Assembly: GCA_044892505.1 (NCBI GenBank) | Contig: CM097882.1 | Span: 148,738,001 to 148,802,000 of the forward strand | Direction of reading: 5' to 3' | From: Schmidtea nova | Lineage: Eukaryota | Length of the DNA stretch: 64,000 nucleotides | In this document: piece by piece, positions 8,001 to 53,975 of the stretch | How positions within the stretch are numbered: position 1 is the stretch's first letter | Layout of the letters: the number at the start of each line of letters is the position of its first letter | The notes under the pieces: generated by a model | What the model was told of the DNA's origin: nothing | The model's input: only the letters and a program-made list of their open reading frames with translations | Databases searched by the model: none | Position numbers and translations under genes: made by a program

Positions 8001-11000
8001 TAGTCATATTCTATTTGTGAAAAAACAAGTTCTATGCTTTGAATTACATTTCTTATGTTTTTTAAATATATTTGGATCAACAAATTTTGTAATGACGCCT
8101 GTCCCTGGCTGCAGGCTTTATTGCAAACAAATAGGGAAGCTTGTTCATTTTATAAAGGTCAGTGGTTGCAGTGGTCATTTATAAATTTCAATTTACTGTC
8201 CCTTTTGAAAAGACTTTGCAAAATTGCCAAAAAACTCGAAAATGATTACCTTTTTCTGAAATAAGCTCTATTTGGCAATGTAAAATGTTAGTAATATTTT
8301 GCGCAGTTCTCTGTGATTAATGGATAAATAAAATATTACACGTTCTTTAAAATATCAAAACCCCAATACAATATTTGCTTTTACTGCAAAATTGTCAAAA
8401 CTAAATACATACAAAAAGGTCGAAAACAACTGAAATGTACTAAAAAAATCATTGTTCATTTTCGTACAATTCTTCATGACTTTGGTTTCAATAAATTTGA
8501 CTGTCTGTCAAAATCTATCTCAAAACTCTTTAAATCAAAATTGCATTTTGAACGAACAAGGTATAAAAATCTAATGAAAAAATCTAGCTGGCTAAAAATT
8601 TAGTCAGAGTAAACCTTTGGAAATTTTCTATGCAAGCTTCGAACTGAAATGATGTTAGTAGAGGGATATGAGGGCATGAGAACAAAGACACACCGAGGAC
8701 GGGTAAACAAAAGTATTCTGAGTCATGATATGACTCATCATTTATCTAGAACAAAGGCAACAAGTCATGCGATGACTCATCGGATGTGTCATACATTTAT
8801 AGAACAAAGGCATAGAGTTATGCTTTTTAGAACAAAAACCATGGTCATCATCAAAAAAAATTCTAAGTTACTTTAAACAAAGAACTTTTAAGAGTATAAA
8901 ATGGTGATTCCTTGGTAGCAGCATTAAGTATTAAATTAATTAATAAATAAGTAACAAAATAAGTAACAAATTAAGCCTTTGCTGCAAAAATAATTTTATT
9001 AAGTGAGAAAATTATTTTTGCAGCAAAGGCTTATTTTGTTACTTATTTATTAATTAAAAGAACTTTTATTTAGACAAAGTAAACCTTTCAAAAATAAGTT
9101 TTAAATATTATTTTTTATATTATTTGCCACCCTGATAATTCCTCTTCTACTTCCTTATCAATATTTATATTTTTTTCCAACGAAAACTTTAGAGTATCAA
9201 AGTGAATGTTACATAATTTAATATATAATTTCAAATATTCTTGTTCAAATGTTCTTGTAGTAATGATATAAAAACGTCATTGAATTTTTTATTAAAAATT
9301 TTTAAATATTTAAAATAAGGAATTAAAATCATTAGCTGAAATTCCACAGAGACTCTCAGGCAATTTATAGTTGAGAAATTTTTAAAATAGTAAAATTCAT
9401 GATTTTTGGAAATAACTTTAAAGTTGAAAGAATTATATAGAAATATATTTTATAAAATAAAAATATTCATCCAGTGAAGGGTTGAATTTATTTAAAATAA
9501 TATATATTACCATTAATGGGTGTTTTCATATAGTATCTGTTTTCACAGTTATTGCCAAAAAAGTTCAAAAAACATCTTAAAAAAATTTACAACCATCAAT
9601 AAAATAATATTATGTAATTATTTTTCTTACTCGCAGTATGTCGTTTGAGTTGTATAATTTTTAAGAAATATTCCTTGATTATTGCAATATTTTTTATCCA
9701 TGTATTTTAATCTTTCCACTAAGTTATATGAAACTGAAAAAAAATCTTTAAAAACCAAAAATATAAACATTTATTTACCTGTTTTGGAAACGTCGACACA
9801 AGTCGGTCCCGCAAATCCTTTATTACACCTGGAAATTACACAAATAATATTTTCATTATGAAAATTATACCAAAAGAAATTAAATAATTTATTATTTATG
9901 TCAAATGGTGATCAAATAGTGAATACATTTGATACAAATAAATATCACAAATTCCTAGATAGAAAATTTCAAATAAATGAAAATTAGAATAGAATATTCA
10001 ATTACTTCGATAAACTTTGATAAAAATTGTTTTAGACATTCGCAATTGAAATAAACAATTACCAAATATTGAGCATTGATTTATTTTTATAATGTTAACA
10101 TTTTTATATAAACATTAATTGATATCAATAATTCCCATAATGGTAAGACTATAGATCAAATTTTTTTAACAAGTACACAATATTCCGGCACAGCCTTTAT
10201 CAAGTGTGTATTTGGTAATACACAATTGATAAAGGCTGTGCTTAAATAATGTGACTTTTAATATAATGATTACACATGGAACCGGTAATTCGAGTATAAA
10301 ATTACAAATTATAAAAATTACATTTACTTTGTAAGATTAATATAAAAAGTATTTTTAGTTGAGAATTCACCAAAACAAAAACAATTGAAAAATGAAAAAC
10401 AACAACAAAAATAAAACTCATTAAAGGATAATAATTGTCAATAAATATTTTGGAAAAAAACATTTGTCGAATGACTTATTTGTTTTTAACAAGTAAAGCT
10501 TGTGATTTTTTGTGATACCCAGTGCAAATCCCCAATAGCAGACTAGTTTCGAGCTTTTGGCTCTCATCAGTGCAATGCAGAATACGAGAAAATTTCTCTC
10601 CGCGCCTAGTAAGTATAAAACAAAGTCAAAAGATTTTTGTTATATACTATACCTGGTACACTGGATAACAAAAATATATATAATAAAAATCTTTCAACTT
10701 TGTTTTATACTTACCAGGCGCGGAGAGAAATTTTCTCGTCTTCTGCATAGCACTGATGAGAGCCAAAAGCTCGAAACTAGTCTGCTATTGGGGATTTGCA
10801 CTGGGTATCACAAAAAATCACAAGATTTACTTGTTAAAAACAAATAAGTCATTCGACAAATGTTTTTTTATTTAATACAGGAGTGTACAACCCGCAGCCC
10901 GAGGCACTCTTATATTTATAATCATGTTTTTTGTTGTTCGTTCATTATATGTTTTCTTTTTATATCTAGTTTCCCCCTCAAATTTACCATTGAAAAATTT

Positions 11001-20600: not shown

Positions 20601-23574
20601 CATCGCATTCGAAAATATGAAAAATGCTCTAATGTCCTCACCTATTCTAGGGTTTCCAGATTTCGAAAGAAAATTCATTCTGGTTACAGGTGTTAGTTTT
20701 GACACGATTGGTGCTGTATTATCACAGAAAGATGACAATAGGTGTGAAAAGTATTAGCATACGGTTCTCATGCAATGAACAATCATGAAAAGGGATATTG
20801 CATAACAAGAAAAGAGTTGCTGTCAATTTATTATTTTTGTCAACATTTCAATCATATGGAAAACGGTTCACTTTGAGAACGGATCATAAAGCTATCATGT
20901 TTATGCTATCTACAAAAGAAACCAATAACAACGCAATTTCAGATATGGATTAATTACCTCAGTAGTCTGGATATTAAAATAAGGTCTAGAAAAGGTACAG
21001 ATCATGCAAATGTAGAAATCTTGTCAAGGAGTACATGTGGAACATGAACACAATGTTTATTGGCACACGAAGACGCGAAAGTAGAAAGAATGAAAACTTG
21101 AATAATAAACACGATGGAAAAACTGAAGATTATAAGTGGCAAAACAATAATACAGAAATAGAAAAAATAAAAAAGGAAAGAGCACATCGTTCTAGTAGGA
21201 AATTTATACTGGTAGACAATGTGGTGAAAACTATAGACTCTATAGTATAGAGGGTAAGATATGGATACGTAGAGACAGAAGACAAGAAATGATAAAAAGT
21301 ATACATATTTTACTATCACACGCAGGAGCAGAAAAAGTGACAAAATATATAGCGGACAATTACGATATGAGAGACATAAAAAGAATCAGTAAAATAAACA
21401 ATTGCAAATTGCAGATCATGTCAAAGAACGAAAGTTCTAACAACAAAGATGAGGGAAGAGACAATAAAACTGACAGCAGGAGAACCGTGGGAAAAAGTGT
21501 ACATTGATATATGTGGCCCATTACAGGAAACATTCAGAAAGAAAAGATATAAAATCGCAATTATTGATCAATTTAGCAGATATATCTCTCTGACGGTTGT
21601 CGCAAAACAGAATGAAGAAACGGTGAAGGAAACAATACTACAAAAATGGATTCTTAGATTTGGAGCATCAAAGGAAATTCACATAGATTGTGGAGAAGTA
21701 TTTGAATCCAAGATGATGAAAGATTTTACAAAATTATTGGGAATTACACTATGCTTTTCAAGTCCATACCACCATAATGCAAATGGTTTGATAGAACGTC
21801 AATTCAGGACAATAAGAGACTATATAAAGGCACCATTAAAAGGGAAAAGTAGAACAGATTGGGCAGAGATCATACCGGAGATTGAATTTACCATGAATAC
21901 AACGTTTCAGAAATAATATTTGGAAGAAAAATAGCTCGAGAACAATTTCATAGTAAAACGCCAATTTCACAAAATGGAGATACACGAGAAACAACCCAGA
22001 CAAAAAAATCCATCAATATTGGAGATGAGATACTGGTAAAAGATAAGGAAAGATACAAAGGCCCATACATAATAATGCAGAAGATCCATGACCGCCAATA
22101 CCTGTTACAAGATGAAAGTGGGAAAATGATCCAGAGAAATGTTGAAAAGATGAAGAAATTTCATAAAGAAGAAGGATGTGAGGTGTTTTCAGCTGAGAAC
22201 TAAATATTTCAATGATTTATTACAATAATTTGAAATGATAAATAATTTAAATTTAAAATAATTGTTATAATTAATGTATATTTAAATTTTTATAATTTTT
22301 ATAATTTGTAATTTTTATTTTTAAAGTTTGTAATTTGAAGAGAGGAGATAAATAATTAATTTTAATAAATTATAATTTTATAAATAATTTTATACATTTT
22401 AGAATTTATAAATTGTTGTGAAAATATTTTGTTCAAGGCTGAAAATTTGTTTGCAAATTATATAATATTTCATAAAATAAAAACTTGGAATTATGACTTC
22501 AACTTCTCAAACTGATTTAGAAAATAATTTAGANNNNNNNNNNNNNNNNNNNNNNNNNNNNNNNNNNNNNNNNNNNNNNNNNNNNNNNNNNNNNNNNNNN
22601 NNNNNNNNNNNNNNNNNNNNNNNNNNNNNNNNNNNNNNNNNNNNNNNNNNNNNNNNNNNNNNNNNNNNNNNNNNNNNNNNNNNNNNNNNNNNNNNNNNNN
22701 NNNNNAGTGATGTGTGTAGAATAAACTTGATATCTTCGTAACTCTTGGTGATATCCTCACTCTAGTACCATTAGTTACTCTTTGGTAATTGTTAGCGGTT
22801 TGTGAACCAATCAGTAGGTGAAAAAAAACTAATCGTCAATATATTCTCCTTTTGGGATTATGGCTGGTGATAAAAGGTATTTCGCACACACTTACTCTAA
22901 GTGTTCCATTGCTATAATATATAAATTTATTATTTTTTCTAGTATTTCAATTAATATTTCACTATTTGGATAATCCGTAATTTAATATACTTATTTTCAA
23001 CCACGTCGTATAACCCCCCTCAAAATCACCATTAGAAAAGCCAAACCAAATCAAAATCAAGATTTATTTAATCAGTGTTATTTTACAAAAAAGAATATAA
23101 AGAACAGCAGAAATACGGAGAATTTTAAACAATTTACCAAACGGAATTTTACCAGAGTTTTCCAATTAGAAGACCAATTTTATTTTTCATAAAATATAAT
23201 AATTCAATGAAATCATTGTTTAATTGAAAAATTACCTTCCATTAAAAGTCAACAATTAATTAGTTTATTTGAAATCATCAATCTTTCTCAAAAAATACTT
23301 TTTGCCGACAATCAAAATTTTAGAATAATTACTTTTGCATTGATAAAAAAATGATTGTGAAAAGTCGGATTTTATGAAATTACGAAAAAACTCATTTAAA
23401 ACTTAGAAAATTGCCAAATTGAGATGAAATGATATTTAATTTGATTTTTATAAAATATTTTTTTAAAGGCTGTATCGAAATATTGTGTGCCTAACAACCA
23501 TAGTCTTACAAAAATTAATATGAAGATTATTGAATTAAAAATAAAAAACATTTCATTCTATGGTATTATGTTAC

Positions 23575-27000: not shown

Positions 27001-30000
27001 TAATTAAATATATTTTAAGATTTAACCATACTTTATTTTCCAAGATCTCCACCAATCAATTGAAAATAAGTTATTTTGAAATCTCCGCCAAATTTTATTT
27101 AAACAAAATATTTAAAAATCACTTTGCTTAAACACACAAAATTTTCAAAGTGATTGAAAAAGATATTTATAAAAAAATATTTTACCAATATAAATAAATT
27201 TTTTTGTATTTATGAAATGTCATAAAAAAGATTATCAGACTATTTTCGGTAGTTAAATATAAATACGAAACAATAATAATATTAAAAATAATATATTTAA
27301 AAAATTACGTTTTACAACGATGGAATAAGAAGCAGATCCAATAACATTAACAGATTCGCACACTTGAACTTCATTAGTTGAATTATTAATCGGTTGTATG
27401 AGTCTCACTCCTCCTCTAAATAATAATAATATTAATAATCATAATAATAATAATAATTGAATCAAGCCAAGACAATTTTCAATGCATTTTTATTTTCATC
27501 ACTAAGCAATTCGTCTGTCAAAATGTCAAAGATTTCACTGTTTAACTCGAAATCATCAAAAGAAGCATTGGATTGTTGAAGTACGTCAGATCTTTGAATT
27601 CTCGGCTTTAATCACAATTAACTTTCTTAAATTGAAAAGAAGGATTGATATCTCTTGGGGATATAACATTATTTCCACAATCTATAGAAATACACTCTTT
27701 CGTTTCCAAAGCATCGTCTTCAGTTTGACTATCAACCATCGAATTAGAATCTTTTTGTATGAGAACGTTGCCGATATGATTAAAATGTGATGAAATCAAC
27801 TCTATAGTCACATGAAACGAATTCGAGTCAGTCATAACGAATACAAGAACAATTCCTTGAATCACAAAGAAAAATATCCCCTCAGACAGAATCACCAAAA
27901 CCCAATGTTGAAAATTTAAAAACCTTCCACTTAAAGCAAAATTTAAATCCAATTTTCCCAGAATTCTAAATCAAAAAGCTCAATAAAACAAATCTTCAAA
28001 AATACAATTAATAACCGAATTTTTATTCAACTCCTTCCAAACATCAAAAAGCCGTTGAACTAATCGCGCGCACAGACGCGAGGAAATCATAATGCGCACA
28101 CAGACGCGTATACAAACACCAAAACAAGCGTACACAGACACGTATATGCAGACCAAATATATAAAGGCGCATACAACAGCCGAAACAATAATAATAATAA
28201 TTATTATTAATAATAATAATAATTAATAATAATAGAAGAAAAATAAATAATCAGTAAAATGAATTCAATTAACATTAACAAGGAAGTTTTCACTCCTCGT
28301 TCAAACAAAAATTATGAAACATTTCTCTATCAAATTATTTTCATCAATTAGATCTACAGTACCAGTATACAAATAAATGAAATTATTTGAGTAACGTTAA
28401 TAAAACACTCGCAGAGTCAAAAAATACTTCAATTAAAAGTTACCTACTTGAATTGCAATGATGGTCGCCGCCATCATACTTGATATTATATATTAATAAC
28501 AAATCTATTTTAAGAAAACTTTTATTTATTAAAAACAGAAATAACGAAATGATCGACCTTCTATTATTGCAAAATATTTATTTTTAAGTCGTTATATAAT
28601 AAATATTGAATTAAATTAATTTAATTTTATATTCTAATTTTTTCATTTCTTATAACTTTCGAGTGTATATGTTGAGACCAAAGCTTCATTATATATGAAC
28701 AATGACATAAAAATTTTATTACTTTTATTCTGTCAATAAAATTGTTTCTTTTAACCAATGACCTACTGTCAATTATTTTTATTTTCAAATCATTTTTAAA
28801 TTGTTGATGAATATTTTGGAGTATTTTTAAATTTAATTCGTATTTGATTTTTGATTTATTCCACATTTTCTATATTAACCCTTTCAATGCTTAAGTCATA
28901 TGTACTCGTGAAATAATAGTGTGGCTCATTTTAAATTGTTTTTAAATTGTTCCCCAAGAAACGCGACTATTTACACTGTGTACTCAAACAAGTCATGTAT
29001 CTACTAGCACGATAGATGCCAAGGGACAATATAGCGCTTTTTGTATAGGGAAATCGGTGACGACCAACCACTACACGAATAAACTTTCACCGAAACATGT
29101 GCGCAGAGCGAGCACAAAATCTCAAATCGTATTGCGCAGTGGAAGGGTTAATATAAATCATATATTCATGTTTACTAAACTTATCTGATTAGCTATCTTC
29201 ATTAAATTTCATCCATCCCTCAAAATAAGTAACACTAAAGTTCCTTGGGTAAAATTAGACCAATATATGGATTTATATTAAAAACAATATTTTTTATTTT
29301 TTTGTTAATTTATTGTGAATGAATTCAAATAGAAGAGAACAAAATATTCCATATAAATTCAATAAGAAAAATTTTAACTTTATCGAAATAGATCTCAGGG
29401 ATGAATTGAGATTTAAATAGATCGGTTTTTCTCTTAATAAACGAAAGTATTTTAAACTATTGTTTGAATAGTAAAATGAAAACCAATAAAATTTTAAAAA
29501 AATCAAAGGTAAAGTAAATAAAAATAAAAATATTATATTTCTAAACAAGTTATAAAAAGGAACAAAATATTTAAATAATACAATTATTTGTAGTGCTATA
29601 ATTCTCAGGCTTTTGAAAATTTTATAACTTTCATTTCATTAGTTTTTACAACATAAAATTTTCACATATAATAAATACTGTAACGTGTTATCGTGTACCT
29701 AACAACCAAAAACAATTTTGATCTATAGTCATACAATTATTAATATGATAATTATTGATTTTAAAAAATAGGTCAAAGGTGAAACCAAAAAATAATTATG
29801 ATAATTTCCAACTTGACTTATAAACATCACGACAAAATAAATATCTATTAAATGTGCTGGGGTTGTTAAAATAAAAAGAGAATAAATTTAAAATGCACAA
29901 ATCTATGCGCAAATCAAAAAAAATACGAAAATTTGAAAAATAATAATTAAAGTGCAAACATTAATTAAAATTTATAAAATTCAAAAATAAAGATTTAGAG

Positions 30001-33000
30001 GCGAAAACTGGTATGGAAAGATGCCAAATGATGAGACAAATTCAGATATGGGTATATAAAATTAAAAATGGGCGCCCAGAAAGAAATATTAAGAAAATAC
30101 AAATTAATTAAAATAATTAATTACCTAATGGGAAACCCGAGCGACGTGGGAAACCCGGGCGTCAACAAATATATTAATTAAAAACTAAATTTACTAACTG
30201 AAGGGTGCCCCGGGGAAAGAAGCCACAAACTCACTTAGCGGCAACTCCCAATCTAATTAAGCAGTTGACAGTTTATTTAAGGCGTGACAGGACCAATCGA
30301 CAAGGCACTTAATAAACGGAGAGCAATTTGTCGATATTGTCAGTTGGTCGAAGCGAAACTTAAAATTTGAGTGAGAATCGTAAAGGACGAAAAGGAAGCT
30401 TGAACGGTAATTGCAAGTTAGAGTGTCGATTTACTAATTTCTCCTGGGATCCAGAAAGGGAGATCTTCCATTGGGTCTTCTACCCTAACGTAAGGAGAGT
30501 GCAGAAGATATTATATTGTGTAACTGTGTTTAATCAAGTGTGGTAAACTAATTTGAAAATAAAGATTATTGTGTTGGGTTGATTTCTTATTTTTAACCCT
30601 TTCTAAGGCAAAGGAAACTAAAAGTGATGTAAAACTCAAAGTTTATTAATAATAAATATAGCGGGAAAACACATCTATGGTTTCAAATACTATAAATTTG
30701 TTCTCTTGTGGCTCAATTTATGTCAGTAGTTGTACCAAAAGTAAAAACGATTACCGACAGCGTTACACTTAGATATTTTTATTAGTTTAAAATGGTGTAC
30801 AGTATATTGCCACCACCTTAGAAAGGGTTAAAGGAAAAACCGTAGTCAGATACCACCAGACTGTTCATTATTAACCCAACAAATGCATAATCATTATTAT
30901 AACAATGAAAATAATAATTTATAAAATTCATAAAAATTTTATAAAAGCCAATGTAATTTTAAAACAAACTAATTACTTAATAGGTTCAATAATTGTAGTT
31001 GGATAATGTTTTTGCACTTTCCATTTAGTTACCGGAACCGGATGTCCATTGCTTATACATTCTGCCACGAGAAAATCAAGTGACTTAGTCATATCTTTTA
31101 CAGTGACAGACGGTTTCTTTCCTGAAAATAAAATTTTAAAAATATTCGTTGATATCAAGTGAATAAATTTTTATAGACTTTATTTATAGAAAACATTGTT
31201 AGTTTAATTTATTATTAAAATTGCCTTCAATCAGTTTGAGGTGATGCAACTTTAAAAAAAATAATAAAATAATTAAGTCATTCTACCTTTACATGAATGC
31301 TTGCAATGCAATTAGTCTTTAAAGAGTGAGCGATTTAATGAAATATTCTAACACAAAATTACAAAAAGTGAGCGTAGTTTCATGAGAAAAGTTTTAAACA
31401 AAATTAATAAGTTATTATAAAAATCAATTGCGTTTTAACAATTTTGATTTTTTAATATTCATTCGAATATTTAATTTGAAAATTTGATCAATTTATGCTA
31501 CATGACTTCATGTGATTTAATAACTCAGAAAATGACTTAGATTTTTGATTTAAATCAATAATTTTTATATTAATAATTGTATGACTATAGATAAAAATTT
31601 TTCTTTGATTGTTTAGGTACACAATATTTCGACAAAGCATTTATTAAGTGCGTACGGATTTTTAAATAAATTTCACAAGAGACAATATTAATAAATATAA
31701 TAAAAAGAAAAAATAGAGATTGATATGTAAATATAGCTTTTATAAACAACACCTTTCAAACTTAATAACAATATTAGGAAAATCTGTTGAGATATATGAA
31801 AACTTAAATTTTTTATTTTGGAGGGAATAAGTCATTAATATTACTTCAACAATATTGTAATAAAATCATAACATATTATTTATAGTTACAAAAATATAGT
31901 TTGTTTTAATATGCACGTGCATATAAGCATGGGAGAGCATATTTTCAATTGCTTTATCAAATCATGCTACTACCTGTCGAGTATTGAAATGGGATTAAAT
32001 GCTTTATTTTGCGTGGTGATAACAGTCAACAAATATTGAATCAGTTGCAGGCAACTTAGACAGCATAAACCCCTCTCGTGCAACAATATATCATTGGATT
32101 AGTCAGTTCAAACATGTTTGTCAGTAAATGTTTTATTTTGAGAAGTTCGTGGTCCTGTGAAATTTCTGACCCAAAAAGAGAAAATTGCTTGCAATTCATG
32201 AAAGAAGAACGCCTAGTCAATATCAAGGATATCTCACAGCGGCTTTGCATAGGAGTTTGCATACCAACCAGAATGAATCTAGCGTAAAAAATTGGCCTCC
32301 AGATTTGTCCTATTTTTTCTTTCCTCTGAAATCTTTAAAGACCGATGGGAAACTGTCAGGCAAACCTTCTCATTTTCAATGAACATGGAGACCAATTGAT
32401 CAGAAATATCATTTCTGTGGATGAAACCTCTTTATCCCTGTATATTTCTAAGACAAAAAAGTGGAAGACAAAAAAGAAATGAGTTCAGGAAAATGAAATT
32501 TGGAACAGATCATCGGAAACCATTGATGTTAACAATTATTTGGGATCAGAGTGGCATTATTAATTCGGGTGCCAGTACCTGTATCGTAAAAATACTTATC
32601 GTAATATTGGAACTATATCGTAAAAATACTTTATCGTAAAAGTCAATATTAATTAATATCGTAATTCAAGTTATTCTTTTATATCGTAACAAGAATATCA
32701 TACAAAATATAATTACATATATCATCGTACTATAATTTAACAGTAATAAATCTTTAACTAATGAGCTTTTGCACATAAAAACCATCACAGAATAGGTTCT
32801 GCTACTAGGGTTCTGTTCGCAATGTGCTGCAAGCACTGTTCTGCTACTGAATTAATTTGATGAAAATAAAAACCATTTGTATCTCATGTGTCTCCAAAGT
32901 ACAAAATTCGGATAACCCAGTATGTCCATCTTGTGGCGAAAAAATTGAGCTTGTTATTAAACCTGTCATTTAATTTGATTTATTTATAAATACATTTTTA

Positions 33001-38936: not shown

Positions 38937-38996
<60 letters not shown>

Positions 38997-41791
38997 TTGA
39001 TAAAGACTGCCGAAATATTGTGTACTTAACAACCAAAAACTCCCAAAAAATCTAAATTTATTGTCATGCAATTATGAAAATTATTGATAATTCTAAAAAT
39101 ATATATATTTTCAAAATATTAAAGCCAATGACATATTTAACATAATTTATTAATAATTAATATGTGTTATAAACAAAGTTCTTTTACCAAATTGATTATC
39201 AAATGTAGAAAACCCGAGTTTACCTGTTTTCAGAGAAATTCTAAACAGAAATAAATGATTTCTTATGGAAATTTAAAAATATATTTGTATTTGAATTACA
39301 AATCTAGTCAGCAGCCTTTGGCACTATTCAAAATGTTTTCATAATTCTAAATAACAACCTTTTGATGATTTTGAGCAGCTTTTGGTAAGTATTAGTCAAC
39401 AAATCTTAATTTATTTAATACAAATAAGTATAAGAAATATTTAGATTATATTTTAGAGTAATATGGAGTGTTTTTTGGGATAGGAGGTTAAACTTTAAAA
39501 ATAAGTTAAAAATTTTTTAGAATTAATATGATCTGTTATTAATTAATATTTTCTTCAAATTTTAGTTTGGAAATTTATTAAATAAATACATTTTTTATTG
39601 TTATATATATTTTTTAGTTATTTTATTTTATAATCTTTAAATGTTGCCTCCCCCGAAATTAAGACCTACATGTTATCTATTTTAGATTAATATTATTGGT
39701 TTTTGCAAGAAATACAGTGAATTATATTATTTGTTTATATTTTACGATACTCGGAGAAAATATTGAAATGTATTTATTAAATAATTTATTATTCAACAAA
39801 TTACTGTTTTGATATTTTTTATTACTTTACAAATTTTCAAAGAATTAATTGTTTAAGGTTTTATATTTCCTTATAATTTTAATATCATATTTACATGATA
39901 CTTAAAGTTTATAGAACATAAAAATTTGTATTTCAAAGTTTATATTTTTTTAATGAAATTTTATTTTGATTTTCAAATAGAAATATTAAAGCCAATAATA
40001 ATGAATTATTACTATTAGTCATTGGACAAACCATACTGGATCTATATAAACTTAGAATGTATCAGCTCCAGTATGAAGAGTTACAAAAATACCATAATGA
40101 CTTCAATTATGAGATAAACATAGTATCTGGTGATCCAGACTCTTTTCTTGGTTAAGAATTTTAAATTAGATGATTTTTTGGCGTCCATAGTTAATGATAG
40201 TCTTTTAGATACCTCGAATTATGACCTAAGTCATCAAATTTATTCTAGAAACCTAGATTCCGTCATTGATAAATTCAAAGACTCGAAAAAAGGACTTAAA
40301 TAAAAGGGTTTTGTGTTTCTTAGACGTAAGCATTATAGTCTTTTAGGCAAAAAACAAAGTATTACAGTTAACAGGATAACAGTGAAATGTACTGACCTTA
40401 AGCCTCAGTCGTACTTGGGTTGTTATCGTAATTATTTCAGTAGAAGAATCCAGAATAATCAGTAAGAACCACCAACATTTTGAGCACAAAAATTCTAAAA
40501 TAGGCTTGACAAACTTGGACGGTAAAAGATTATAGGTGTGTAAAAATGAGAGACTGGTTTATGGGCATTATAGGGATTATGGTGGTGCGTGATTCTTATG
40601 ATGAATCCGAATAAAATTTTATTTTAAAAAAATTGTAATTTTGTGTTTTTTTATTGATGTTTCTTTTTGTAAACAATTTTGTGAGTTTTTATTTTTAGTT
40701 GACGCTTGGCAATTTGTTTGTCAATCGTTTTTATGAATTTTAATGTTTATTGAAAACACGTGGGAGTTTTTATAGATGGAAAATTGTCAACAGGGAGAAA
40801 ATTTTTATGTGACTTGTAAAATGTACATGTTTTGTTAAAATTGTTGAAAAAATTATACACTTGAAAATTCATAAAAACAACTGACAAACATATTACCAAC
40901 TGACAATAAAAATCCATAAAAACTGATGACTCTCGGAAATGCAAAGCATCCGTAAAAATTCACAAAAATATTAACAAAAAGAAACATCAAAAAAACAAAA
41001 AATTTTAAAATAAACTTTTATTTAAGTAAAATCTTCTTCGACATCATCTTGATATTCTTCCGCAACTGAGTTCATTTTGTATTGGAAATATCAGAATATT
41101 ACTCATTTATCATTTCGGCTACTAAAATATGATCCGATCGTTGTCTTTTAAAATCATGACAGCAAGCGTTAGAATTGTCAATTTATAGGCTTTTCAAATA
41201 TTATTATTGGATAATTATGAATAAAGGATAATTCTTCCTTTTCTTAATGTTTAATTATTGTTTTAATCTCATTGGTTTTGGTTGATATTAAAGAGAAAAT
41301 TTTGAATTTATTGTTGAATTTTAAAACAAATGGTATAGCGCACATCATGATTGAAATGATGAAATAATTGCTACTTCGAATAAAAATGCTATGAACGGTA
41401 ATAATATACACAAATACCTTGTTATACAGCCTAGGTAAGTTCTTAGAAAATTTGACGTAAAGCGAAATACGGAATAACTAAGCAATCCAAAAAAAATAGA
41501 TTTTTTTCTAACAAAAGAATTGCTGAAATTTTGTTAGGATTGATTAGTTACACGGCTTTTCGATATAACACCAGTTTTATAAGAACGTACATAAGCCGTA
41601 TAACGAGGTACAGGAGTAGACAATAATATTGCTGATGAAATAGTTGAACTGTCCAAATTCGTAGTTATTTTCGTTGATGATAAAATAAATGATTTATGGA
41701 ATATGATTATTTTATATTATTTTTAGAAAAAGAATATTTTAAAAATATTAGATGATTTTAATTGATTTATAAATCACTATCAATATATTCA

Positions 41792-43074: not shown

Positions 43075-44101
43075 CCCCAAAGCGCATAAATTAAGGGCCA
43101 GCAGGTAAAATGTAAAGTATCTATAATAACAAATTATTTTATATATAGAAAACATATACATAACTACTGCAGATCAGGACAAAGAAATAAACACGGTCAT
43201 AAATTACGGGCCTCTACTATAGAAAATAAGAAAAATAAATTAGGTCAAAAAAACATACACAACACACGAAAAACCTATAATGAAAAGTACAAACACGTGG
43301 ACATTATTTAAGTGACAGTCTTTAATTAAGGGATTTTCAAATTTTAAAAAATCATGATTTACGAAGATATTTCAGAAGCTTCGTCTGAATCAACCATGCC
43401 ATTTATTGGAGAAGATCAAGGAGAAATGTAAATTTACAATTATATTAAAAAAATAAAAATTAATATTTTTAGAAATGCAGAAAACGAAGCTATAATGCCT
43501 CAAATGGCCGAAACTGTAGAAAGAAAACATCGAAAAACGTAAAACAAATTTGAATTTTTAATTTTTAACTTAAATTTTTATAGATAATCTGAACTTGAAA
43601 AAACATTATTAATAGAAGTAATGAAACGCGGTGAAAATTATGAAGAATTCGGCAGGCAAATGTTTTTGAACCTAAAATTATTAAAGACATAGTGTCGAGG
43701 TAGAAAAAACTGGCATTCTTACAGCAGGGAAAAGAGGCAGATAACATGTTAGTCTAATAATGGAAAAAAATGGAATACAATGAATTGATTGTGTGGACCA
43801 CAATTATTGGATTACTTTGTAAGAAATGAAAAACTTCTTGGATACAATTAGCTGCAATGTATACACAAAAACAATAAGTTGATAAAATTATAGAGAATTA
43901 CTTTTTTCTGTATTTCATAAATATCTAAAAAATATCTAGATAAAATAAATTGGTATCTAACTTAAAATATTAAATAAACTTAAAATATGCTAAAATAGCT
44001 TAAATACATAGTTAAAAATTAAATTTAAAAAAATAAGTAGTAAATAAATACCAACTGCCTGTATTAAGTGTCTTTTGGCCCTTAATTACAGACTTTTGGT
44101 G
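43075..44101 (+). mobile_element. Tc1/IS630-like element (inner copy) nested in its own relative
   Basis: TA-CCCCAAAGCGCATAAATTAAGGGCCA ... TGGCCCTTAATTACAGACTTTTGGTG-TA; ATG at ~43355, two ~44-bp GT-AG introns, HTH-like RKT*SELEK..RGE..FGRQM..KTGILTAGKRG. Confidence 0.7.
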
Positions 44102-45796
44102 TACTATAGAATAAAAGAAAAATAAATTAAGTCAAAAAACAGACAACACACCCTAAAATACAAGCACACACACATAATTTAAGTGACAATCTTTAATTAA
44201 GGGATTTTAAAATTAAAAAATAAAATGATTTATGAAGACATTTCAGAAGTTTCGTCTGAATCAACCATGTAATTTATAGGAGAGGATCAAGGAGAAATGT
44301 AAATTTAAAATTATATTAAAAAATTTGATAAAAAAATATTTTTGAAATGCAGAAAATGAAGTTATTATGCCTCAACCAGCTGAACCTGCAGAAGGGAAAC
44401 ATCGAAAAACGTAAAATAAGTTTGAATTTTTAATTTTTAACTTAATTTTTTAAAGATTTACAGAACACGTCAAAAATTTCTTAATTAAAGTAGTGAAACG
44501 GGGTGAAGATTGTCAATGATTTGGCCGTCAAATGGGTTTTAAAACTGGGCTTCTTACAACAGGGAAAAGATGGAGAAAACATATCAGAAGAAAAAGGAAC
44601 GCAATTATTGTCAAATAAAAATTATAATGACTTGCTCNNNNNNNNNNNNNNNNNNNNNNNNNNNNNNNNNNNNNNNNNNNNNNNNNNNNNNNNNNNNNNN
44701 NNNNNNNNNNNNNNNNNNNNNNNNNNNNNNNNNNNNNNNNNNNNNNNNNNNNNNNNNNNNNNNNNNNNNNNNNNNNGAATAAGGGTTTTAAAATTAAAAT
44801 ATTATACAGTAGAAAATGGAAGGTACAGTATAAATATACATGTGGATCAGATGGCAATAACAATTCAATAATCAATGGAAAATATCAACTTCAACGACAT
44901 AATGATTTTAGTGATTTTATATGATGATATTTTACTGTTGATCTCATTTGACTTTTGTTTTATGATGATGAAAATTATGTGATTAAGATGTGACTATCTG
45001 GCAATTTTTATTTTTATGGGATAATTTTATTTTGTTTCTGTTAATAAAATATTGTTGACAATTAATTTTTGTAATGACAATTTATCAGCGTGACAATTTA
45101 TCATTTGACAATTTATCATTTGTGTTATTGCGAACATTTATTGACATTTTTTATGGTGATGGACAAAATTTTATATAATTTTGAAAAAATATTTTGTGTT
45201 GAAAATATTTTATGTAAATTAATTTTTAACTATTTGGAAAATGGATTATATTTTCATTTATATTTTAATATTTTAATTCAATAAATAATAATAATAAAAT
45301 AAATTAATAATACCGATTGTTTAAATAAATTAAAAATAAATAAATTACTGTTTGTTTAAATAAATTATAATTCTGACCTACAAGGTCAGAAAAAAGAAAT
45401 AATATCTCAAGGTTAAAAAATAATTTTGAAAACAATTCTGTTTTGAAAACAACTCTATTTTCAAAAACAATTTTAATCAACTCAAGAGGCAAAATAACAA
45501 TCATTATTGACAGATTAAGTGCCTTAAAATTTAGTATATAAACTGACTGATTTTTCAGTCAAAATCTTTGCGTAAGAAGAATTTCATAGTTGTTATCGAC
45601 TATTGAAATAATAATTTCGAGAATACAAGATATCGAGCTCAGAAGGCATTCACACATACACATGCATACATATATATTTACACATTAAAGGAACAATATT
45701 GTGAATCTGTAACAATTTTTTAGGTAATTTGTATTTGTTGTATTTGAATAAAATTCTTTGAACCAGTGTTATCTTATTTATTTATATAAGATACCA

Positions 45797-45934
45797 AATA
45801 CACACTTGATAAAGGCTGTGCCGAAATATTGTGTTATTGTTTAAAAAAAAAAATTTTTGATCTATAGTCATTATGAGAATTATTGATAATAATAATAAAA
45901 AAAGATCAAAGGTGAAAAAAGATAATTATGATAT
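45797..45934 (+). mobile_element. 138-bp hammerhead-bearing retroposon with 12-bp TSD
   Basis: TSD tataagatacca at 45785-45796 and 45935-45946; empty site in the paralog at ~52550-52570. Confidence 0.85.
45802..45834 (+). ncRNA. Minimal hammerhead, U3-A8 core variant
   Basis: ACAC-TTGATAA-A-GGC(TGT)GCC-GAAA-TA-TT^-GTGT: the C3-G8 pair is replaced by U3-A8 and helix III is the palindrome ATAT. Confidence 0.75.
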
Positions 45935-47736
45935 TATAAGATACCAAGTTGAGATTCTTGGAACCTCAACACACACACACACACACATATATATATAATA
46001 AATTGATATTTAACTTTTTTTAATAATATTAAATAAATTTAAAATAAGCTAAAATAGGTTAAAAATATGGTTAAAATCATAATAAATAGTTATTACTTAC
46101 CAACTGACAGTAATAAATGTCTTTGTAGCTCTTAATTACAGACTGTTGGAGTATAAACAGGAAACATAAAAAAGAATTTTAGGTTACATTTACATTGGAG
46201 GTGATTCAATAGATCGAGTTCATGAATATAGTTTTTTGTATTGTGTATTTTTAGGTTACTAATTCTAACAAAGTTTTTACATTTTATGTTTAAAACACAC
46301 AAGTGCATCCAACTCTTAGGGTAAGTATGTATTTTATTAACGCATAATTTATGTTGCATATTCTGATTTTGTTTTGCATTATTAATAAATTAATGCTGTG
46401 ACCACGCAAATTGATATGACTAATGACATTATGTTTGGAAGTATGCCAACTGTCATAAGAAACAAAATAGAAAGGGTTCAAATGAGACAGTAATTTAAGA
46501 GTACGAAGATCTATCTTTTTAATATATAAAAACATACACTATTTCAATTTTGGGATTATCCTGGTAACAGTGTCCTAGGATTAAAAAAGGAATCATCTAA
46601 ACAAAAATCTGAAGATCTAACAATAAAATATATTTTTTATTAAAAGTAAAAAGAGGAATTTTGTTAAGGTTTTCAAACCTATCATTTCTAACGGATATAT
46701 TGCAAAATACACTGCTCTTTGATCGTGACGGGCAGATTTTGGTGTTTCGTCTCTCATATAATCATTTCTGATCTGCGAGCTATATCAATGATTTTCCAAT
46801 TTTCTATAATATTTCTAAATCAATAAACTTAAACTTTTATTATTCTACAGAATCTTGATAAGGGGTGTCGCGTCTGATTAATTTTTCAAAAACGATAACT
46901 AATACTGACAAAATTTTAATTAACAAACTATTTTGTTGGGTTTTTTTCCAAAAATTATTATTAACGTCTGACTCCTCGTGATATGAATTTAAAATTAAAC
47001 GAATCACCCAACACAATAACTTTTATTTGACACAAAAAGTTAACACTTCGTTGCGCAAAGATGAATGTCACAATGGGAAATTTCCTAATGCTACACAGTG
47101 TCTTCGGTAACTTATCTCTTTTTATTTCAAATATTTAGAACGCTTCTTTGATCAACTAGTAATGTTATTCGTTTATCAACTCTTTTTATATTATTTTCCC
47201 ACTTTTCTTCAATCATAGGCTGACCTCTCAATCATCCATTGCGGTTCATCGGGCTTCCTATTTTAAGAAAATTTCTACAACAATTTAAATTTAATAAAAT
47301 TTCAGATCACCCATACATCTCGGGATCTTTTCTAATTTGCATTGGGTAATTAAATTATTTTGTTGTACACTTTGGGTTCCCGATGTATTTCGAATTTTCT
47401 TTTATTTCTGTCTTTCGCTACACGTATTTTGGCTAGGATAATCAAATCTATTTGTTGCTAACTCGGGTTTCTCACACTGTTTGTGTTTTCGATTAGGTAA
47501 TTTATTTTATTATTTTATTATTTTAAATATTTGTAGTTTCTTAATATTTATTTCTGTGGACTCCTATTGATTTTATATTGTTATATTTGAATTCTTCCCG
47601 TCATTTAGCACTCGTCCATACCGATTTCCGCGCAAGCTATTAATTATTAATTTTCTAAATTTTTATTATTAATGTTTGTCGTGTTGTTAAACAATCTTCA
47701 ATAAAGGTTACTATTCTCAGTTCCTCCTTCGCTCTA

Positions 47737-50287: not shown

Positions 50288-52933
50288 GATAAACCTCATC
50301 CAATGGGACTCCCAGTCCAAAGATCTACTCAACTATTTTTTTCAATTAATAAATTCATTCTTTTTTAAAATTTGAAAAATTGAAAAATCTTTAAAATTTT
50401 AAAACAGTATGAATTTATTTATTCGAACAAAGATTTTAGAAAATTTTTTTAAATTTTAAATTAAAAAAAAGCAAAACAAATGCGAGAGATCAGAGAATTG
50501 TTGACTAATGACTATCTAGTGCTGAAGAATCGCTTAGGACCCGTTCTGATCAATTTTTGGCGGAAGAATTTGCCACTTTATCTTCTATTTCGAGGAGGAC
50601 CCTGCAAATATTTTATGAAAGCATTATACTTGTGCAAGCATGTGCTCGCTGGTCAAGCCCCTTTGCTCATGCCAGTATTTATTTTATTGTTATCCTAGTG
50701 GATCTTATTATTATTATCTTATCATTATTAATTATGTCATTTCTATCATGTCGATTTAAATTTTGAAAAATTAATATTTTGTATATTCATTTCGTTTTTC
50801 TTTCTTATTGTATTGAATATACTACATTTTATGAAATTACGTCAAAGAAATTATTTTCTTTTTGAAAATCTGTTGCATTTTGCCCCACTTAATATTATCA
50901 AACTTAAATTAATTTTTACTCAAATTATTAATATCATTTATTACAATATATTTTTTTATATTAATAATTCCTCCATACGTCTGATGTTCGTCCAGCGAAA
51001 GTTGAACCTTCATTAGTCACTTTTGCTAATCATTAGTTAACTGGGGCTCTTCCAGTGATCTGATCCATTTTTCATCGAAGTGAGCGCAAACCTCGAATAA
51101 CGCTTCATCTCATACCTGGCTATATGAGGAGGAGTGGCTTGGCCAAGCGCAAGGTCTGTTCAAAATAATTAACGCCTAGAATCCTATTACATTTTTATTG
51201 AAATGCGATATGGTATTCAAAGATCCAAATGATTATTTTATTATAGTATTGTATTTATATTTTATTTATATCAAACAACATAACTCTCATAACTACATAA
51301 ATATTCGGACACAATAAAAGTTATCGAAACTATGCATTCATCTCCTAAATCGCCTTCGCTCAATGAACGTTGTCTTTACTTCACTATGAAAGAAATCGGC
51401 TAGTCATTTGAAGAGTCGAATGTGTAAAAGCTCTTAAATATCAATTCAAAGAGCAATAAAAATGTTCATATTGTATTATGTTTTCAGATTAAACTCGATA
51501 ATAGTCATGTTAGAGACAGGGAAAATAGTACAAACATTTGAGTTAGATGAAGACTATAGCATAGGAACAAATAAATATAGGCTAAACATGCACATAGACA
51601 CATCACCTAACAAGATCCCTCCCGATGAAAAGATGGAATTCAGACAATAATCTATTTTATCTTGAGACAATCTTATTATGGCACAAACTCATTCAGCCTC
51701 GTGATTCAAATAACAATTTATTCTATCTCTTGACAATCTTATTAAATGACAAATTTTTTATATCTTTTCTTTATTCAATCTATTTTATCTTTTGAAAATC
51801 CTATTTGTGTGACAAATTCATTCAGTTTTGTGATGTAAATAACAATCTATTTTATCTTTTGACAATTTATCATTTGTGATCTTGTGAACATTTATTGACA
51901 TTTTTTATGGTGATTGACAAAATTTGATATAATTTTGAAAAAATATTTTGTTTTGAAAATATTTTATGTAAATTAATTTTTTCAGCTATTTGGAAAATGG
52001 ATTATATTTTCATTTATATTTTAATATTCTAATTCAATAAATAATAATAATAATAATAAAATAAATAAATAATACAGATTGTTTAAATAAATTAAAAATA
52101 AATAAATTACTGTTTGTTTAAATAAATTATATTTATGACCTATAAAGGTCAGTAAAATGAAATAATATTCCAAGGTTAAAAAATAATTTTGAAAACAACT
52201 CTATTTTCAAAACAATTTTAATCAACTCAAGAGGCAAAATAACAATCATTATTGACAGATTAAGTATATAAATTTAGTATATAAATTGACTGATTTTTCA
52301 GTCAAATCACCATAAATATTTTACAAAGTTAGGAAGAATTACAAATTCGGTAAACGATTTGTAAATTAAAATCGAGCATGCAAAATATTTATATCCGAGC
52401 TCAGGAAACTGCAAGCACTTACACACACATACATATACATACAAAATAACAAAAAAATTATTATCCTTGAGGTAATTGTTTATTTTCATCAAATTTGTAA
52501 TTGTTATAAATAAATAAAGTCTTTGAAAAGAACCAGTCTTGTTTTTATTTATATAAGAAACATCAAGTTGAGATTCTCGGAAACTCAACATTCATTTGAA
52601 TTTCACGTTAAGTCGCAAACATTATTAATAAAAACCTTCTGAAAATTGTATCTAATATTTTAAGTGTTCGATATTTCCAAAAGAAATGTCTTGAAAATTG
52701 AAATGTAATTATCAAAAAATTTGCATATGATCGAAGCTAAATTTTGCAAAAAATAAAATTTATTTTTTATAGATAATATATTATGAAAAAAAATTAGATT
52801 AAATTATTAGAATATAAAAATTATAAATCTAAATATTTTATCATTATATTAATTTCATAGAATTTTAAATTTTAATTTATCTTGAAGAAATTATAAATAT
52901 TATAATTATTATAATTATTATTTTATTTCTGAA

Positions 52934-52990: not shown

Positions 52991-53079
52991 GAAATAATTA
53001 TCTTTTTGTTTCACCTTTGATCTTTTTTATTATTAATATCAATAATTCCCATAATGGATGACTATAGATCAAAATTTCT

Positions 53080-53975
53080 TGATCTTGAAAATTCTTTAGT
53101 GGATGCAAAAGAATTGGCTGAATCTTTGGAAGTTGAACCAATTTTTATTAAAAAAAAATTACGCCGTAAAAAACAAATGTTTGCTTATTAGAATAGAGAT
53201 GAGATTGTAATAAGTCCAAAGAACAATTTTAATAAAAACGTCTTTAATGTAATTTTTGATATTCTTAGATATATCTTTTCAAGAGCGATTTCAACAACTG
53301 AATGAATTTCACCAAACCTGGGGAATTTTATATAATCTGAAGAAATTACCTGCCGACAATGACTTGCTTAAGTTTTGAAAAGATCTGCATTTGAAATTAA
53401 AAATGGAAAATAATTGCGATAGTAATGGCTCACAATTATTTGACGAGTTGAAATCTGCTTCCACCCTTTTGCCTAAAGATATTCTTGGACCTCTAAATGT
53501 CTTGAACTTTATAAAATCCAGTGCATTGCAAAATGTGGTTCCAAATATTTGGATTTCATTAAGAATAATGCTTACCATACCAATTACTGTTGCAAGCGGT
53601 GAGAGAAATTTTAGCAAATTGAAGCTAATAAGAAACTATTTAAGATCTACTATGAGTGACGAACGATTGAATAACTAAGCGATATTATCCATCGAAGAGG
53701 TAATAGCAACACAATTAGACTAGAAAAATAAACTTTTAGTATTGTATTAAGTTTAAAATTTGTTCCTGTTTAATTTTATAAATAAATGATTTGTATTTGG
53801 ACTTTAATTTCCTTTGTTAATTAATTCTACCTTTAAAAGGCAAAACGTTCATATTTATTTTTACACATTAGGTTTTACTAATAACTACCAAGTTACTTAC
53901 AAATAAAATGCATAATTCATAAAGGGCGCAATTTAAATCCTTGTCCGGGAGCTAGAATTTCTTGGGCCGGCCCTG
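53080..53975 (+). mobile_element. 5'-truncated hAT with transposase dimerization domain
   Basis: PNIWISLRIMLTIPITVASGERNFSKLKLIRNYLRSTMSDERLN; right end GGGCCGGCCCTG. Confidence 0.9.

What the first reader, a model, noticed from the sequence alone, without database searches (positions are those of the whole stretch)
45785..45946. A ~140-bp mobile element that is little more than a U3-A8 hammerhead
The insert starts with a variant minimal hammerhead (UUGAUAA core, compensatory U3-A8 pair, extra A before helix II, palindromic AUAU helix III). It is flanked by a perfect 12-bp TSD, and the pre-insertion site is visible in the paralog at ~52550. Related pieces occur at 10120-10254, 23465-23540, 29690-29815, 31575-31654, 38992-39090 and 53000-53080, i.e. 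seven in 64 kb. The TSD points to target-primed reverse transcription. It is either a recurrently truncated Penelope end or a tiny non-autonomous ribozyme retroposon (retrozyme-like, possibly with a circular RNA stage). Small Penelope-linked hammerhead variants are known, but this family may be undescribed.
Basis: partly seen in the sequence, partly recalled or inferred. Interest (0 to 1): 0.8.

Follow-up and report, generated by a model that had tools for sequence, protein, structure and literature searches.

The report
Short Penelope-type retroelement with minimal hammerhead
The 137-bp insert is a real mobile-element copy from a small repeat family that begins with a degenerate "minimal hammerhead" motif of a kind already described in Penelope-like retrotransposons, so it is a new family of a known kind, not a new kind of element.

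Summary
A 137-bp insert (45798-45934) is flanked by a perfect 13-bp (not 12-bp) target-site duplication. A paralogous repeat copy at 52552-52577 shows the empty site.

The copies have discrete ends. Six of eight reach the same 5' terminus. The 3' ends fall into two classes that differ by about 31-42 bp, in both subfamilies. One locus is a head-to-head pair, and four of seven copies lie next to microsatellites. These are the published signatures of Penelope-like element (PLE) insertion, including the optional 30-40-bp "tail".

The 33-nt motif (45802-45834) matches the published PLE "min-HHR" class: the U3-A8 variant, an unpaired base before helix II, a G10.1-C11.1 pair and a palindromic helix III. 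It is weak, though. Helix II has only 3 bp and helix I 4 bp. The AUAU dimer helix is predicted to be unstable. No Rfam hammerhead model detects it, the copies show no covariation, and only this copy keeps the motif intact.

The window holds no PLE ORF and no tandem array, and nothing points to a circular RNA. My best reading is a PLE-derived non-autonomous, pseudo-LTR-like (pLTR-like) unit: a new member of a known kind, of modest interest. A canonical type I hammerhead pair at 10454-10869 was found in passing.

The parts
45785..45797 (.). Left copy of the 13-bp target-site duplication
   Evidence: Perfect direct repeat with 45935-45947. Present once in the paralog at 52552-52566.
45798..45934 (+). 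The 137-bp element copy c1 (long form, subfamily A)
   Evidence: Bounded by the TSD and absent from the paralog. 95% identical to 10121-10217(-) and 91% to 52994-53089(-) over ungapped aligned columns.
45802..45834 (+). 33-nt minimal-hammerhead-like motif. Helix I is 45802-05 with 45831-34. The 7-nt core with U3/A8 is 45806-12. The unpaired A is 45813. Helix II is 45814-16 with 45820-22 (loop 45817-19). GAAA is 45823-26. The palindromic UA is 45827-28, U16.1 is 45829 and U17 is 45830. Cleavage would be predicted after 45830.
   Evidence: Only descriptor hit in the window; 2 of 300 simulated windows give a hit. The isolated RNA folds into helix I plus helix II at -5.9 kcal/mol. No Rfam hammerhead hit at E<=10.
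45856..45887 (+). Well-conserved central blocks of the family
   Evidence: A gapped pattern from these blocks hits 4 copies and no shuffles. See alignment A2.
45900..45934 (+). Optional 3' extension ('tail', bounds approximate), present in c1, c3 and c4 only. Its ends are complementary to the central blocks.
   Evidence: Alignments A6 and A7. Inverted repeats 45856-74/45892-910 and 45872-83/45922-33; the latter is also in c4.
45935..45947 (.). Right copy of the 13-bp target-site duplication
52552..52577 (+). Empty (pre-insertion) site in the paralogous repeat copy
   Evidence: Left and right flanks of c1 are contiguous here.
10118..10217 (-). Copy c2m (subfamily A, short form, full 5' end, one core change)
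10218..10256 (+). Copy c2p: the first ~39 nt only, head-to-head with c2m across a 6-7-nt spacer
   Evidence: 87% identical to c2m and 89% to c1.
23464..23552 (+). Copy c7 (subfamily B, short form, lacks the first ~13 nt)
29663..29803 (+). Copy c4 (subfamily B, long form, motif degenerate)
31556..31654 (-). Copy c5 (subfamily B, short form, core and helix II changed)
38991..39098 (+). Copy c6 (subfamily B, short form, 2-nt deletion in helix II), inserted in an (AT)n array
52994..53089 (-). Copy c3 (subfamily A, long form, 5'-truncated: lacks the hammerhead-like part). Its 3' end abuts an (AAT)n array.

Best explanation
The insert is one copy of a short, non-coding retroelement family that derives from, and is mobilised by, a Penelope-like element (PLE). 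It behaves as a pseudo-LTR-like (pLTR-like) unit. The unit has three parts. It starts with a 33-nt PLE-type minimal hammerhead of the U3-A8 kind. About 60 nt follow, holding two well-conserved blocks, which I infer to be the region a PLE reverse transcriptase binds and starts from. Last comes an optional tail of roughly 31-42 bp. Shown: insertion with a 13-bp target-site duplication; a discrete 5' end; two 3' end classes present in both subfamilies; a head-to-head pair; association with microsatellites. Inferred: a PLE GIY-YIG endonuclease makes staggered nicks, and reverse transcription starts at either of two neighbouring internal sites, giving tail-less copies of about 95-105 bp and tailed copies of about 137-141 bp. 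Also inferred: copying runs to the 5' end of a short template RNA, for example a transcript that starts in a pLTR. A solo pLTR left by recombination is a variant that cannot be excluded. In dispersed single copies the hammerhead is most likely a relic. It could act only as a dimer through a 4-bp A/U helix III, which is predicted to be unstable, and six of the seven copies that carry the region have it damaged.
For: TSD and empty site. Family of seven loci in two subfamilies. Same 5' terminus within about 2 nt in six of eight copies. Bimodal 3' ends in both subfamilies. This matches the optional 30-40-bp PLE tail and the two adjacent reverse-transcription start sites (PMC11167929, PMC8557442). 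Two copies are 5'-truncated with intact 3' ends (c3, c7), which sets the orientation. The c2m/c2p pair is head-to-head with 5' ends inward, as described for PLEs; PMC8557442. Four of seven copies lie within 40 bp of a microsatellite (P about 1e-4), and a (TA)n bias is known for PLEs (PMC8557442). The motif meets the features listed for PLE min-HHRs in PMC4209133: and direct reading. All copies that keep the core share T at position 3 and A at position 8, so this was the family's ancestral state. A canonical type I hammerhead pair in a PLE-like inverted arrangement lies 200 bp from c2, so hammerhead-bearing elements live in this genome.
Against: No reverse transcriptase other than that of an LTR element, and no GIY-YIG domain, appears among 219 open frames of 55 aa or more. 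The PLE partner is therefore inferred, not seen. No Rfam hammerhead model matches the motif even at E<=10 in a 191-nt search. Rfam does find the canonical hammerhead at 10747-10788. Helix II is 3 bp, against 6-8 bp reported for PLE min-HHRs. The seven copies show no compensatory changes. The short 3' ends lie in an A-rich tract, which also fits poly(A)-type LINE priming. c2p lacks a proper 3' end. Only eight copies were available, and the genome could not be reached.
Confidence: 0.55

Rival explanations
1. It is an ordinary SINE-like retroposon mobilised by a LINE, possibly read on the opposite strand. The hammerhead-like string is a chance or decayed resemblance with no role.
For: A 13-bp TSD is typical of LINE-type target-primed reverse transcription. 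The short forms end in an A-rich tract. c3 is followed by (AAT)n. No Rfam hammerhead hit, no covariation, and a predicted unstable helix III. PMC6155905 warns that relaxed minimal descriptors give many false positives. On the opposite strand, six copies would share a 3' end with variable 5' truncation.
Against: The descriptor hit rate is about 0.007 per window. The motif shows four independent published min-HHR traits at once (PMC4209133). There is no tRNA, 5S or 7SL head and no LINE ORF in the window. A long/short dimorphism recurring in both subfamilies is a PLE trait. On the opposite strand, c3 and c7 would lack their 3' ends.
Confidence: 0.22
2. The copies are simply severely 5'-truncated ends of a full-length Penelope-like element, with no discrete short unit.
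For: PLE copies are heavily 5'-truncated, and most min-HHRs are solitary and were ascribed to truncated PLEs (PMC4209133, PMC8557442). c3 and c7 are truncated.
Against: Six of eight copies stop at the same 5' nucleotide within about 2 nt, in two subfamilies. None continues upstream into shared sequence or an ORF.
Confidence: 0.1
3. It is a retrozyme-like element that spreads through a small circular RNA made by double hammerhead cleavage.
For: It is small and non-coding and has a hammerhead-type motif. Animal retrozymes are related to PLE pLTRs and leave dispersed monomers (PMC7229834; preprint 10.64898/2026.07.22.740005).
Against: There is no tandem or dimeric head-to-tail copy in 64 kb. Copy ends do not coincide with the predicted cleavage site. 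The motif lacks a canonical core, loop contacts and a stable helix III. The 137-nt RNA is not unusually self-paired (z = -0.84). At 137 nt it is below the reported 170-400 nt.
Confidence: 0.07
4. It is a MITE or other cut-and-paste DNA transposon remnant.
For: It is small, AT-rich and non-coding. mariner and hAT remnants lie in the window.
Against: There are no terminal inverted repeats, only internal ones. A 13-bp TSD is not typical of mariner (2 bp) or hAT (8 bp). Truncated copies with fixed opposite ends indicate retroposition.
Confidence: 0.03

Closest known systems
Minimal hammerheads (min-HHR) of Penelope-like elements, U3-A8 variant of the Cercyon PLE of Schistosoma mansoni (Cervera & de la Pena 2014, PMC4209133; dimeric small variants, Lunse et al., cited in PMC6765202)
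   Same: U3-A8 in place of C3-G8. An unpaired base between positions 9 and 10.1. A G10.1-C11.1 pair. Palindromic 15.2-16.2 positions with no helix III loop. A 4-bp helix I. Mostly solitary, sequence-heterogeneous genomic copies.
   Different: Helix II is only 3 bp with a 3-nt loop, against 6-8 bp reported. Helix III would be 4 A/U pairs. No PLE ORF or pLTR pair is seen in this window. No sequence homology could be tested because no comparator sequence was available.
PLE insertion architecture (pLTR, optional 30-40-bp tail, inverted adjacent copy, variable TSD, microsatellite bias; PMC8557442, PMC11167929)
   Same: A 13-bp TSD. Two 3' termini about 31-42 bp apart in both subfamilies. A head-to-head pair at 10118-10256. 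Four of seven copies beside microsatellites.
   Different: The unit is only 95-141 bp with a fixed 5' end. No coding part is present. The inverted partner lacks its 3' end.
Animal non-LTR retrozymes and their dispersed monomers (PMC7229834; preprint 10.64898/2026.07.22.740005)
   Same: Small non-coding hammerhead-bearing repeats related to PLE pLTRs. Solo monomers are scattered through genomes, with TSDs longer than 4 bp.
   Different: No tandem arrays here. The motif is a minimal non-canonical one without loop-loop contacts. The unit is shorter than 170-400 nt. There is no sign of a rod-like circular RNA.
Sm-alpha / Sj-alpha SINE-like hammerhead retroposons of schistosomes (reviewed in PMC6765202, PMC6155905)
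   Same: Short interspersed non-autonomous retroposons that carry a type I hammerhead.
   Different: Those have a Pol III tRNA-like promoter and a canonical, highly active hammerhead. Here there is no tRNA-like head and no canonical core.

Membership tests
PLE-type minimal hammerhead (min-HHR) | Catalytic boxes with C3-G8 or the covarying U3-A8 | tested here: met
   c1 has T at position 3 and A at position 8, with the rest of both boxes present. Four of the six copies that keep this region have the same 7-nt box as c1, and the T3/A8 pair stands in six of seven aligned copies.
PLE-type minimal hammerhead (min-HHR) | [quoted passage not shown] | tested here: met
   A at 45813, G45814 pairing with C45822, and UA at 45827-28. 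The features are as listed in PMC4209133.
PLE-type minimal hammerhead (min-HHR) | Helix I of 4-5 bp and a long helix II (6-8 bp) | tested here: inconclusive
   Helix I is 4 bp, which meets the feature. Helix II is 3 bp with a 3-nt loop, shorter than reported.
PLE-type minimal hammerhead (min-HHR) | Lies in the pLTR of an element encoding RT plus GIY-YIG endonuclease | tested here: not met
   No GIY-YIG and no second RT among 219 open frames of 55 aa or more in the window. Most published copies are also solitary, so this does not exclude descent from a PLE.
PLE-type minimal hammerhead (min-HHR) | Helices supported by covariation within genome families | tested here: not met
   No pair changed on both sides in seven copies, and shuffles do as well. 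The sample is too small to be decisive.
PLE-type minimal hammerhead (min-HHR) | Self-cleavage (as a dimer) | not testable with these tools
   Prediction only: the AUAU/AUAU duplex is +1.6 kcal/mol, against -4.8 for the palindrome of the canonical hammerhead at 10747-10788.
Hammerhead ribozyme as modelled in Rfam (RF00163, RF00008, RF02275-7, RF03152) | Score against the covariance models | tested here: not met
   No hit at gathering score, nor at E<=10 in a 191-nt search, nor at E<=5 over the whole window. Positive control: 10747-10788 scores 27.6 bits with RF00163.
Penelope-like element insertion | Optional 30-40-bp tail at one end | tested here: met
   Three long and four short copies, spread over both subfamilies, differ by about 31-42 bp at the 3' end.
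Penelope-like element insertion | Variable-length TSD, inverted adjacent copy, microsatellite bias | tested here: met
   13-bp TSD. Head-to-head c2m/c2p. Four of seven copies within 40 bp of a microsatellite, P about 1e-4. The TSD is readable for one copy only.
Non-LTR retrozyme | Tandem repeats with a hammerhead in each unit | tested here: not met
   No tandem array of the unit and no head-to-tail neighbours.
Non-LTR retrozyme | Canonical type I hammerhead and a highly self-paired RNA of 170-400 nt | tested here: not met
   Non-canonical motif. The 137-nt RNA has z = -0.84.
Pol III SINE (tRNA/5S/7SL-derived) | Head related to a small-RNA gene | tested here: not met
   ARAGORN finds no tRNA-like sequence. 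Rfam gives no such hit at the copies.
MITE / DNA transposon | Terminal inverted repeats and a short fixed TSD | tested here: not met
   Only internal inverted repeats. The TSD is 13 bp.

The most novel reading that the evidence does not exclude
The family is a free-standing, ultra-short (about 95-140 nt) ribozyme-headed retroposon. It would have its own master copies and be mobilised in trans by a PLE through internal initiation of reverse transcription. It would carry one of the smallest natural hammerhead variants (33 nt, U3-A8, 3-bp helix II), still functional in processing the template RNA, possibly with tandem masters and a circular RNA elsewhere in the genome.
Probability: 0.15. Interest if true: 0.6.

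Novelty: new member of a known kind. Interest (0 to 1): 0.3.

Why it matters
If the PLE link holds, the family is a compact natural example of the minimum RNA a Penelope-type reverse transcriptase needs. That minimum would be a pLTR-like 5' piece with a minimal hammerhead, plus the start region with its two initiation sites. It would also add a very small U3-A8 hammerhead variant from an extremely AT-rich genome to the known spectrum. It does not open a new class: the motif type, its solitary dispersal and the tail signature are all published. Its practical value is mainly for repeat annotation of this genome.

Tried and rejected
Rfam searches gave no hammerhead hit on the element at gathering score or at relaxed thresholds.

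Covariation on seven copies was uninformative.

The search for a PLE partner covered 219 open frames of 55 aa or more against Pfam. It found only LTR-element domains, mariner and hAT.

Attempts to reach more of the genome all failed:
- The metagenome pattern scan gave two chance matches inside one bacterial gene.
- Two genome-contig scans gave nothing.
- The mariner protein search found 96-98% identical copies only on metagenome contigs of 3.8 kb or less, with no element copies.
- The integrase search gave no organism names. The organism remains unidentified, and no genome-wide census was possible.

There is no sequence similarity between this family and the canonical-hammerhead palindrome at 10454-10869.

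An ATG is kept in six of seven copies inside the central block, but the frame after it is not conserved. I dropped the idea that it marks a PLE start codon.

A snap-back origin of the c2p arm was rejected, because c2p differs more from c2m (87%) than c1 does (95%).

I did not scan viral contigs, so as not to fetch animal-virus contigs by pattern. I built no profile or consensus of the family.
Full report
**What is there**

The window is extremely AT-rich (about 22-30% G+C over most of its length), rich in repeats, and clearly eukaryotic. It contains a eukaryotic SSU rRNA fragment, an LTR-retroelement remnant, and mariner and hAT remnants.

At the finding's coordinates, a perfect 13-bp direct repeat lies at 45785-45797 and 45935-45947. 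It encloses a 137-bp insert at 45798-45934. The surrounding DNA is itself a repeat with a second copy at 52062-52590. In that copy the left and right flanks of the insert are contiguous at 52552-52577, with one diverged copy of the duplicated 13-mer. This is textbook evidence of a transposable-element insertion with a target-site duplication (TSD).

**The family**

The copies fall into two subfamilies:
- Subfamily A: c1 45798-45934, c2m 10118-10217(-), c3 52994-53089(-), and the 39-nt c2p 10218-10256(+). Identity is 91-95% over ungapped columns.
- Subfamily B: c4 29663-29803, c5 31556-31654(-), c6 38991-39098 and c7 23464-23552. These are 78-85% identical to subfamily A and to each other.

There is no tandem or head-to-tail arrangement.

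**The ends**

Six of eight copies (c1, c2m, c2p, c4, c5, c6) reach the same 5' terminus within about 2 nt, just 4 nt upstream of the motif's helix I. c7 lacks about 13 nt, and c3 lacks about 42 nt, which is the whole motif.

The 3' ends fall into two classes. Four copies (c2m, c5, c6, c7) end in an A-rich tract just after a conserved block. Three copies (c1, c3, c4) carry a further 31-42 bp and end at the same place. Both classes occur in both subfamilies. The dimorphism is therefore a recurrent outcome of insertion and not a lineage marker.

The extension is complementary to the conserved central blocks in c1 and c4, and one stem is kept in c3 and c4 with a G-U change (and direct reading). 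Only c1 has a readable TSD; c6 may have an (AT)n one.

c2m and c2p lie head-to-head with their 5' ends 6-7 nt apart. c2p is more diverged, so it is an older copy and not a snap-back product.

Four of seven loci lie within 40 bp of a di- or trinucleotide microsatellite. Random placement gives P of about 1e-4.

**Orientation**

The motif strand is taken as the sense strand, for four reasons:
- The two truncated copies (c3, c7) keep complete 3' ends.
- The 3' dimorphism and the head-to-head pair make sense only this way.
- The motif itself is on this strand.
- The opposite reading, with a fixed 3' end at the motif side and variable 5' truncation, needs two copies to have lost their 3' ends.

I hold the orientation with moderate confidence.

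**Is it a hammerhead?**

- a 4-bp helix I;
- a 7-nt box with U at position 3 and A at position 8;
- one unpaired A;
- a 3-bp helix II with a 3-nt loop, closed by G10.1-C11.1;
- GAAA;
- a palindromic UA, then U16.1 and U17.

PMC4209133 lists these same traits as emergent features of the minimal hammerheads of PLE pLTRs: the extra base between positions 9 and 10.1, the G10.1-C11.1 pair, the palindromic 15.2-16.2 positions and a short helix I. That paper also reports the U3-A8 covariation in the Cercyon PLE of Schistosoma mansoni, with about 1,300 mostly solitary, heterogeneous copies.

Three results favour the motif:
- A descriptor built from the window's motif plus these published features hits only c1 in the window and 2 of 300 second-order Markov windows. 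It is post hoc, so this is an upper bound on significance.
- The isolated 33-43-nt RNA has the helix I plus helix II fold as its minimum-energy structure, at -5.9 to -6.5 kcal/mol.
- All copies that retain the box have T at 3 and A at 8, so this was the family's ancestral state and not a private decay.

Several results count against it:
- No Rfam hammerhead model matches, even at E<=10 in a 191-nt search or at E<=5 window-wide. RF00163 does score 27.6 bits on a canonical hammerhead elsewhere in the window.
- Helix II is much shorter than the 6-8 bp described for PLE motifs.
- The trans helix III would be four A/U pairs, predicted at +1.6 kcal/mol, against -4.8 for the canonical motif's palindrome.
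- The seven copies show no compensatory change, and every copy but c1 has a damaged box or helix.
- PMC6155905 warns that relaxed minimal descriptors produce many false positives.
- PLE min-HHRs cleave poorly even as dimers in vitro (PMC4209133).

My judgement is that the motif probably descends from a real PLE-type min-HHR (about 0.6). The chance that this copy self-cleaves is low (about 0.25-0.3).

**Context**

Pfam scans of all 219 open frames of 55 aa or more found one reverse transcriptase with RNase H and integrase (an LTR element at about 18.3-22.2 kb). They also found a second integrase fragment, a mariner transposase and a hAT dimerisation domain. There was no GIY-YIG endonuclease and no second reverse transcriptase. 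No copy is continuous with a PLE ORF, and no autonomous partner of any kind for this family is in the window.

The relaxed Rfam scan revealed two hammerhead matches 200 bp from c2. These are a canonical type I hammerhead at 10747-10788(+), with RF00163 at 27.6 bits against a gathering score of 34 and E = 2e-5 in an 85-nt search, and its mirror image at about 10535-10576(-). Both sit inside a 416-bp palindrome at 10454-10869 whose arms are 93% identical. The 3' ends face outward, which is the inverted arrangement described for PLEs (PMC8557442) and for dual motifs on opposite strands (PMC4209133). The palindrome has no sequence similarity to the c1 family. It does show that hammerhead-bearing retroelements of the PLE or retrozyme world live in this genome.

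**Mechanism**

Shown: insertion with a staggered-cut duplication; a discrete unit with one 5' end and two 3' ends.

Inferred from PMC11167929 and PMC8557442: PLE reverse transcription starts at two adjacent internal sites near the pLTR-ORF junction. This produces the optional 30-40-bp tail, needs only a short RNA segment there, and can prime on both target strands, giving inverted pairs. PLE transcription is reported to start inside the pLTR (summarised in PMC6765202).

A short RNA running from that start through the hammerhead to the initiation region would yield just such 95-141-bp copies. A solo pLTR left by recombination between the two pLTRs would look the same and cannot be excluded. The hammerhead is not needed for insertion in the one PLE tested in vitro (PMC11167929). 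Here it is best seen as inherited baggage.

**Comparison and novelty**

It works like a PLE-dependent non-autonomous element. Membership in the min-HHR class is met on sequence traits. It is not met for Rfam score, pLTR context or covariation, and it is untestable for cleavage. It is not a retrozyme by the defining features: tandem units, a canonical type I motif and a self-paired RNA of 170-400 nt were all tested and not met. It is not a Pol III SINE or a MITE.

Dispersed monomers related to PLE pLTRs are already described (preprint 10.64898/2026.07.22.740005). Hence my rating: a new member of a known kind, interest 0.3.

**Limits and disclosures**

- Only eight copies could be studied. The source genome and organism could not be identified or reached. 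No repeat library was available, so I cannot say whether this family is already catalogued.
- Stretches of N were left untouched. No contig looked human.
- Slip: early in my reasoning I recalled the canonical 7-nt hammerhead box from memory. The regular expression was written from the window's own motif, the C3-G8/U3-A8 statement of PMC4209133, and my own knowledge that position 7 is variable.
- The statement that U3-A8 double mutants keep partial activity rests on my memory of the literature and was not verified here.

Noticed in passing
window 10454-10869 (hammerheads at 10747-10788 + and about 10535-10576 -): A 416-bp palindrome with arms 93% identical. Each arm carries a canonical type I hammerhead: standard core, 6-bp helix I, 4-bp helix II and a loop-less palindromic helix III. 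RF00163 scores 27.6 bits, below the gathering score of 34. The arms are head-to-head with 3' ends outward, like an inverted pair of 5'-truncated PLE or retrozyme units. It is the only copy in the window, is unrelated in sequence to the finding's family, and lies 200 bp from copy c2.
   Followed up: partly
window 57507-57838 (-): Fragments of a eukaryotic small-subunit rRNA (model positions about 1285-1642 of 1831, 77.5 and 71.3 bits). They stand alone in repeat-rich DNA, so this is an rDNA pseudogene fragment or a piece carried by an element.
   Followed up: no
window 47858-49437: A mariner-type element (HTH_48, Transposase_1 and DDE_3 domains) with an internal duplicated segment and a reading frame interrupted by stops. 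Copies 96-98% identical occur on short JGI, ENA and Logan metagenome contigs, where some are labelled SETMAR.
   Followed up: partly
window about 18300-22200 (+): An LTR-retroelement remnant with gag zinc knuckle, reverse transcriptase, RNase H and integrase domains spread over several separate open frames, so it is broken. The breaks were not counted. G+C and purine skew are raised relative to the surroundings. A second integrase fragment lies at 55661-56044 (-).
   Followed up: no
window 53379-53675 (+): A hAT-family C-terminal dimerisation domain (E = 7e-12) in an isolated open frame, about 290 bp from copy c3.
   Followed up: no
window 45300-45971 and 52062-52590: Two copies of another repeat, 87% identical in the best 265 bp and each starting with a 35-bp tandem duplication. 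These provide the filled and empty sites. Further pieces of the flank recur at 43934-44103 and 3013-3094.
   Followed up: partly
window 62893-63884: Nested tandem repeats with periods of 45, 70, 132 and 268 bp (up to 97% matches). This satellite-like array is of unknown nature.
   Followed up: no
window 8958-9047: A near-perfect hairpin that gives sub-threshold matches to several miRNA-precursor models on both strands. It is probably a foldback repeat and not a miRNA gene.
   Followed up: no
window 45872-45883 / 45922-45933 and 29744-29756 / 29791-29803: The last 12-13 nt of the long-form copies are complementary to the conserved central block (83% in c1, 92% in c4). A second stem (45856-62 with 45904-10) crosses the first. 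Together they may form a 3' structure or pseudoknot of the template RNA.
   Followed up: partly
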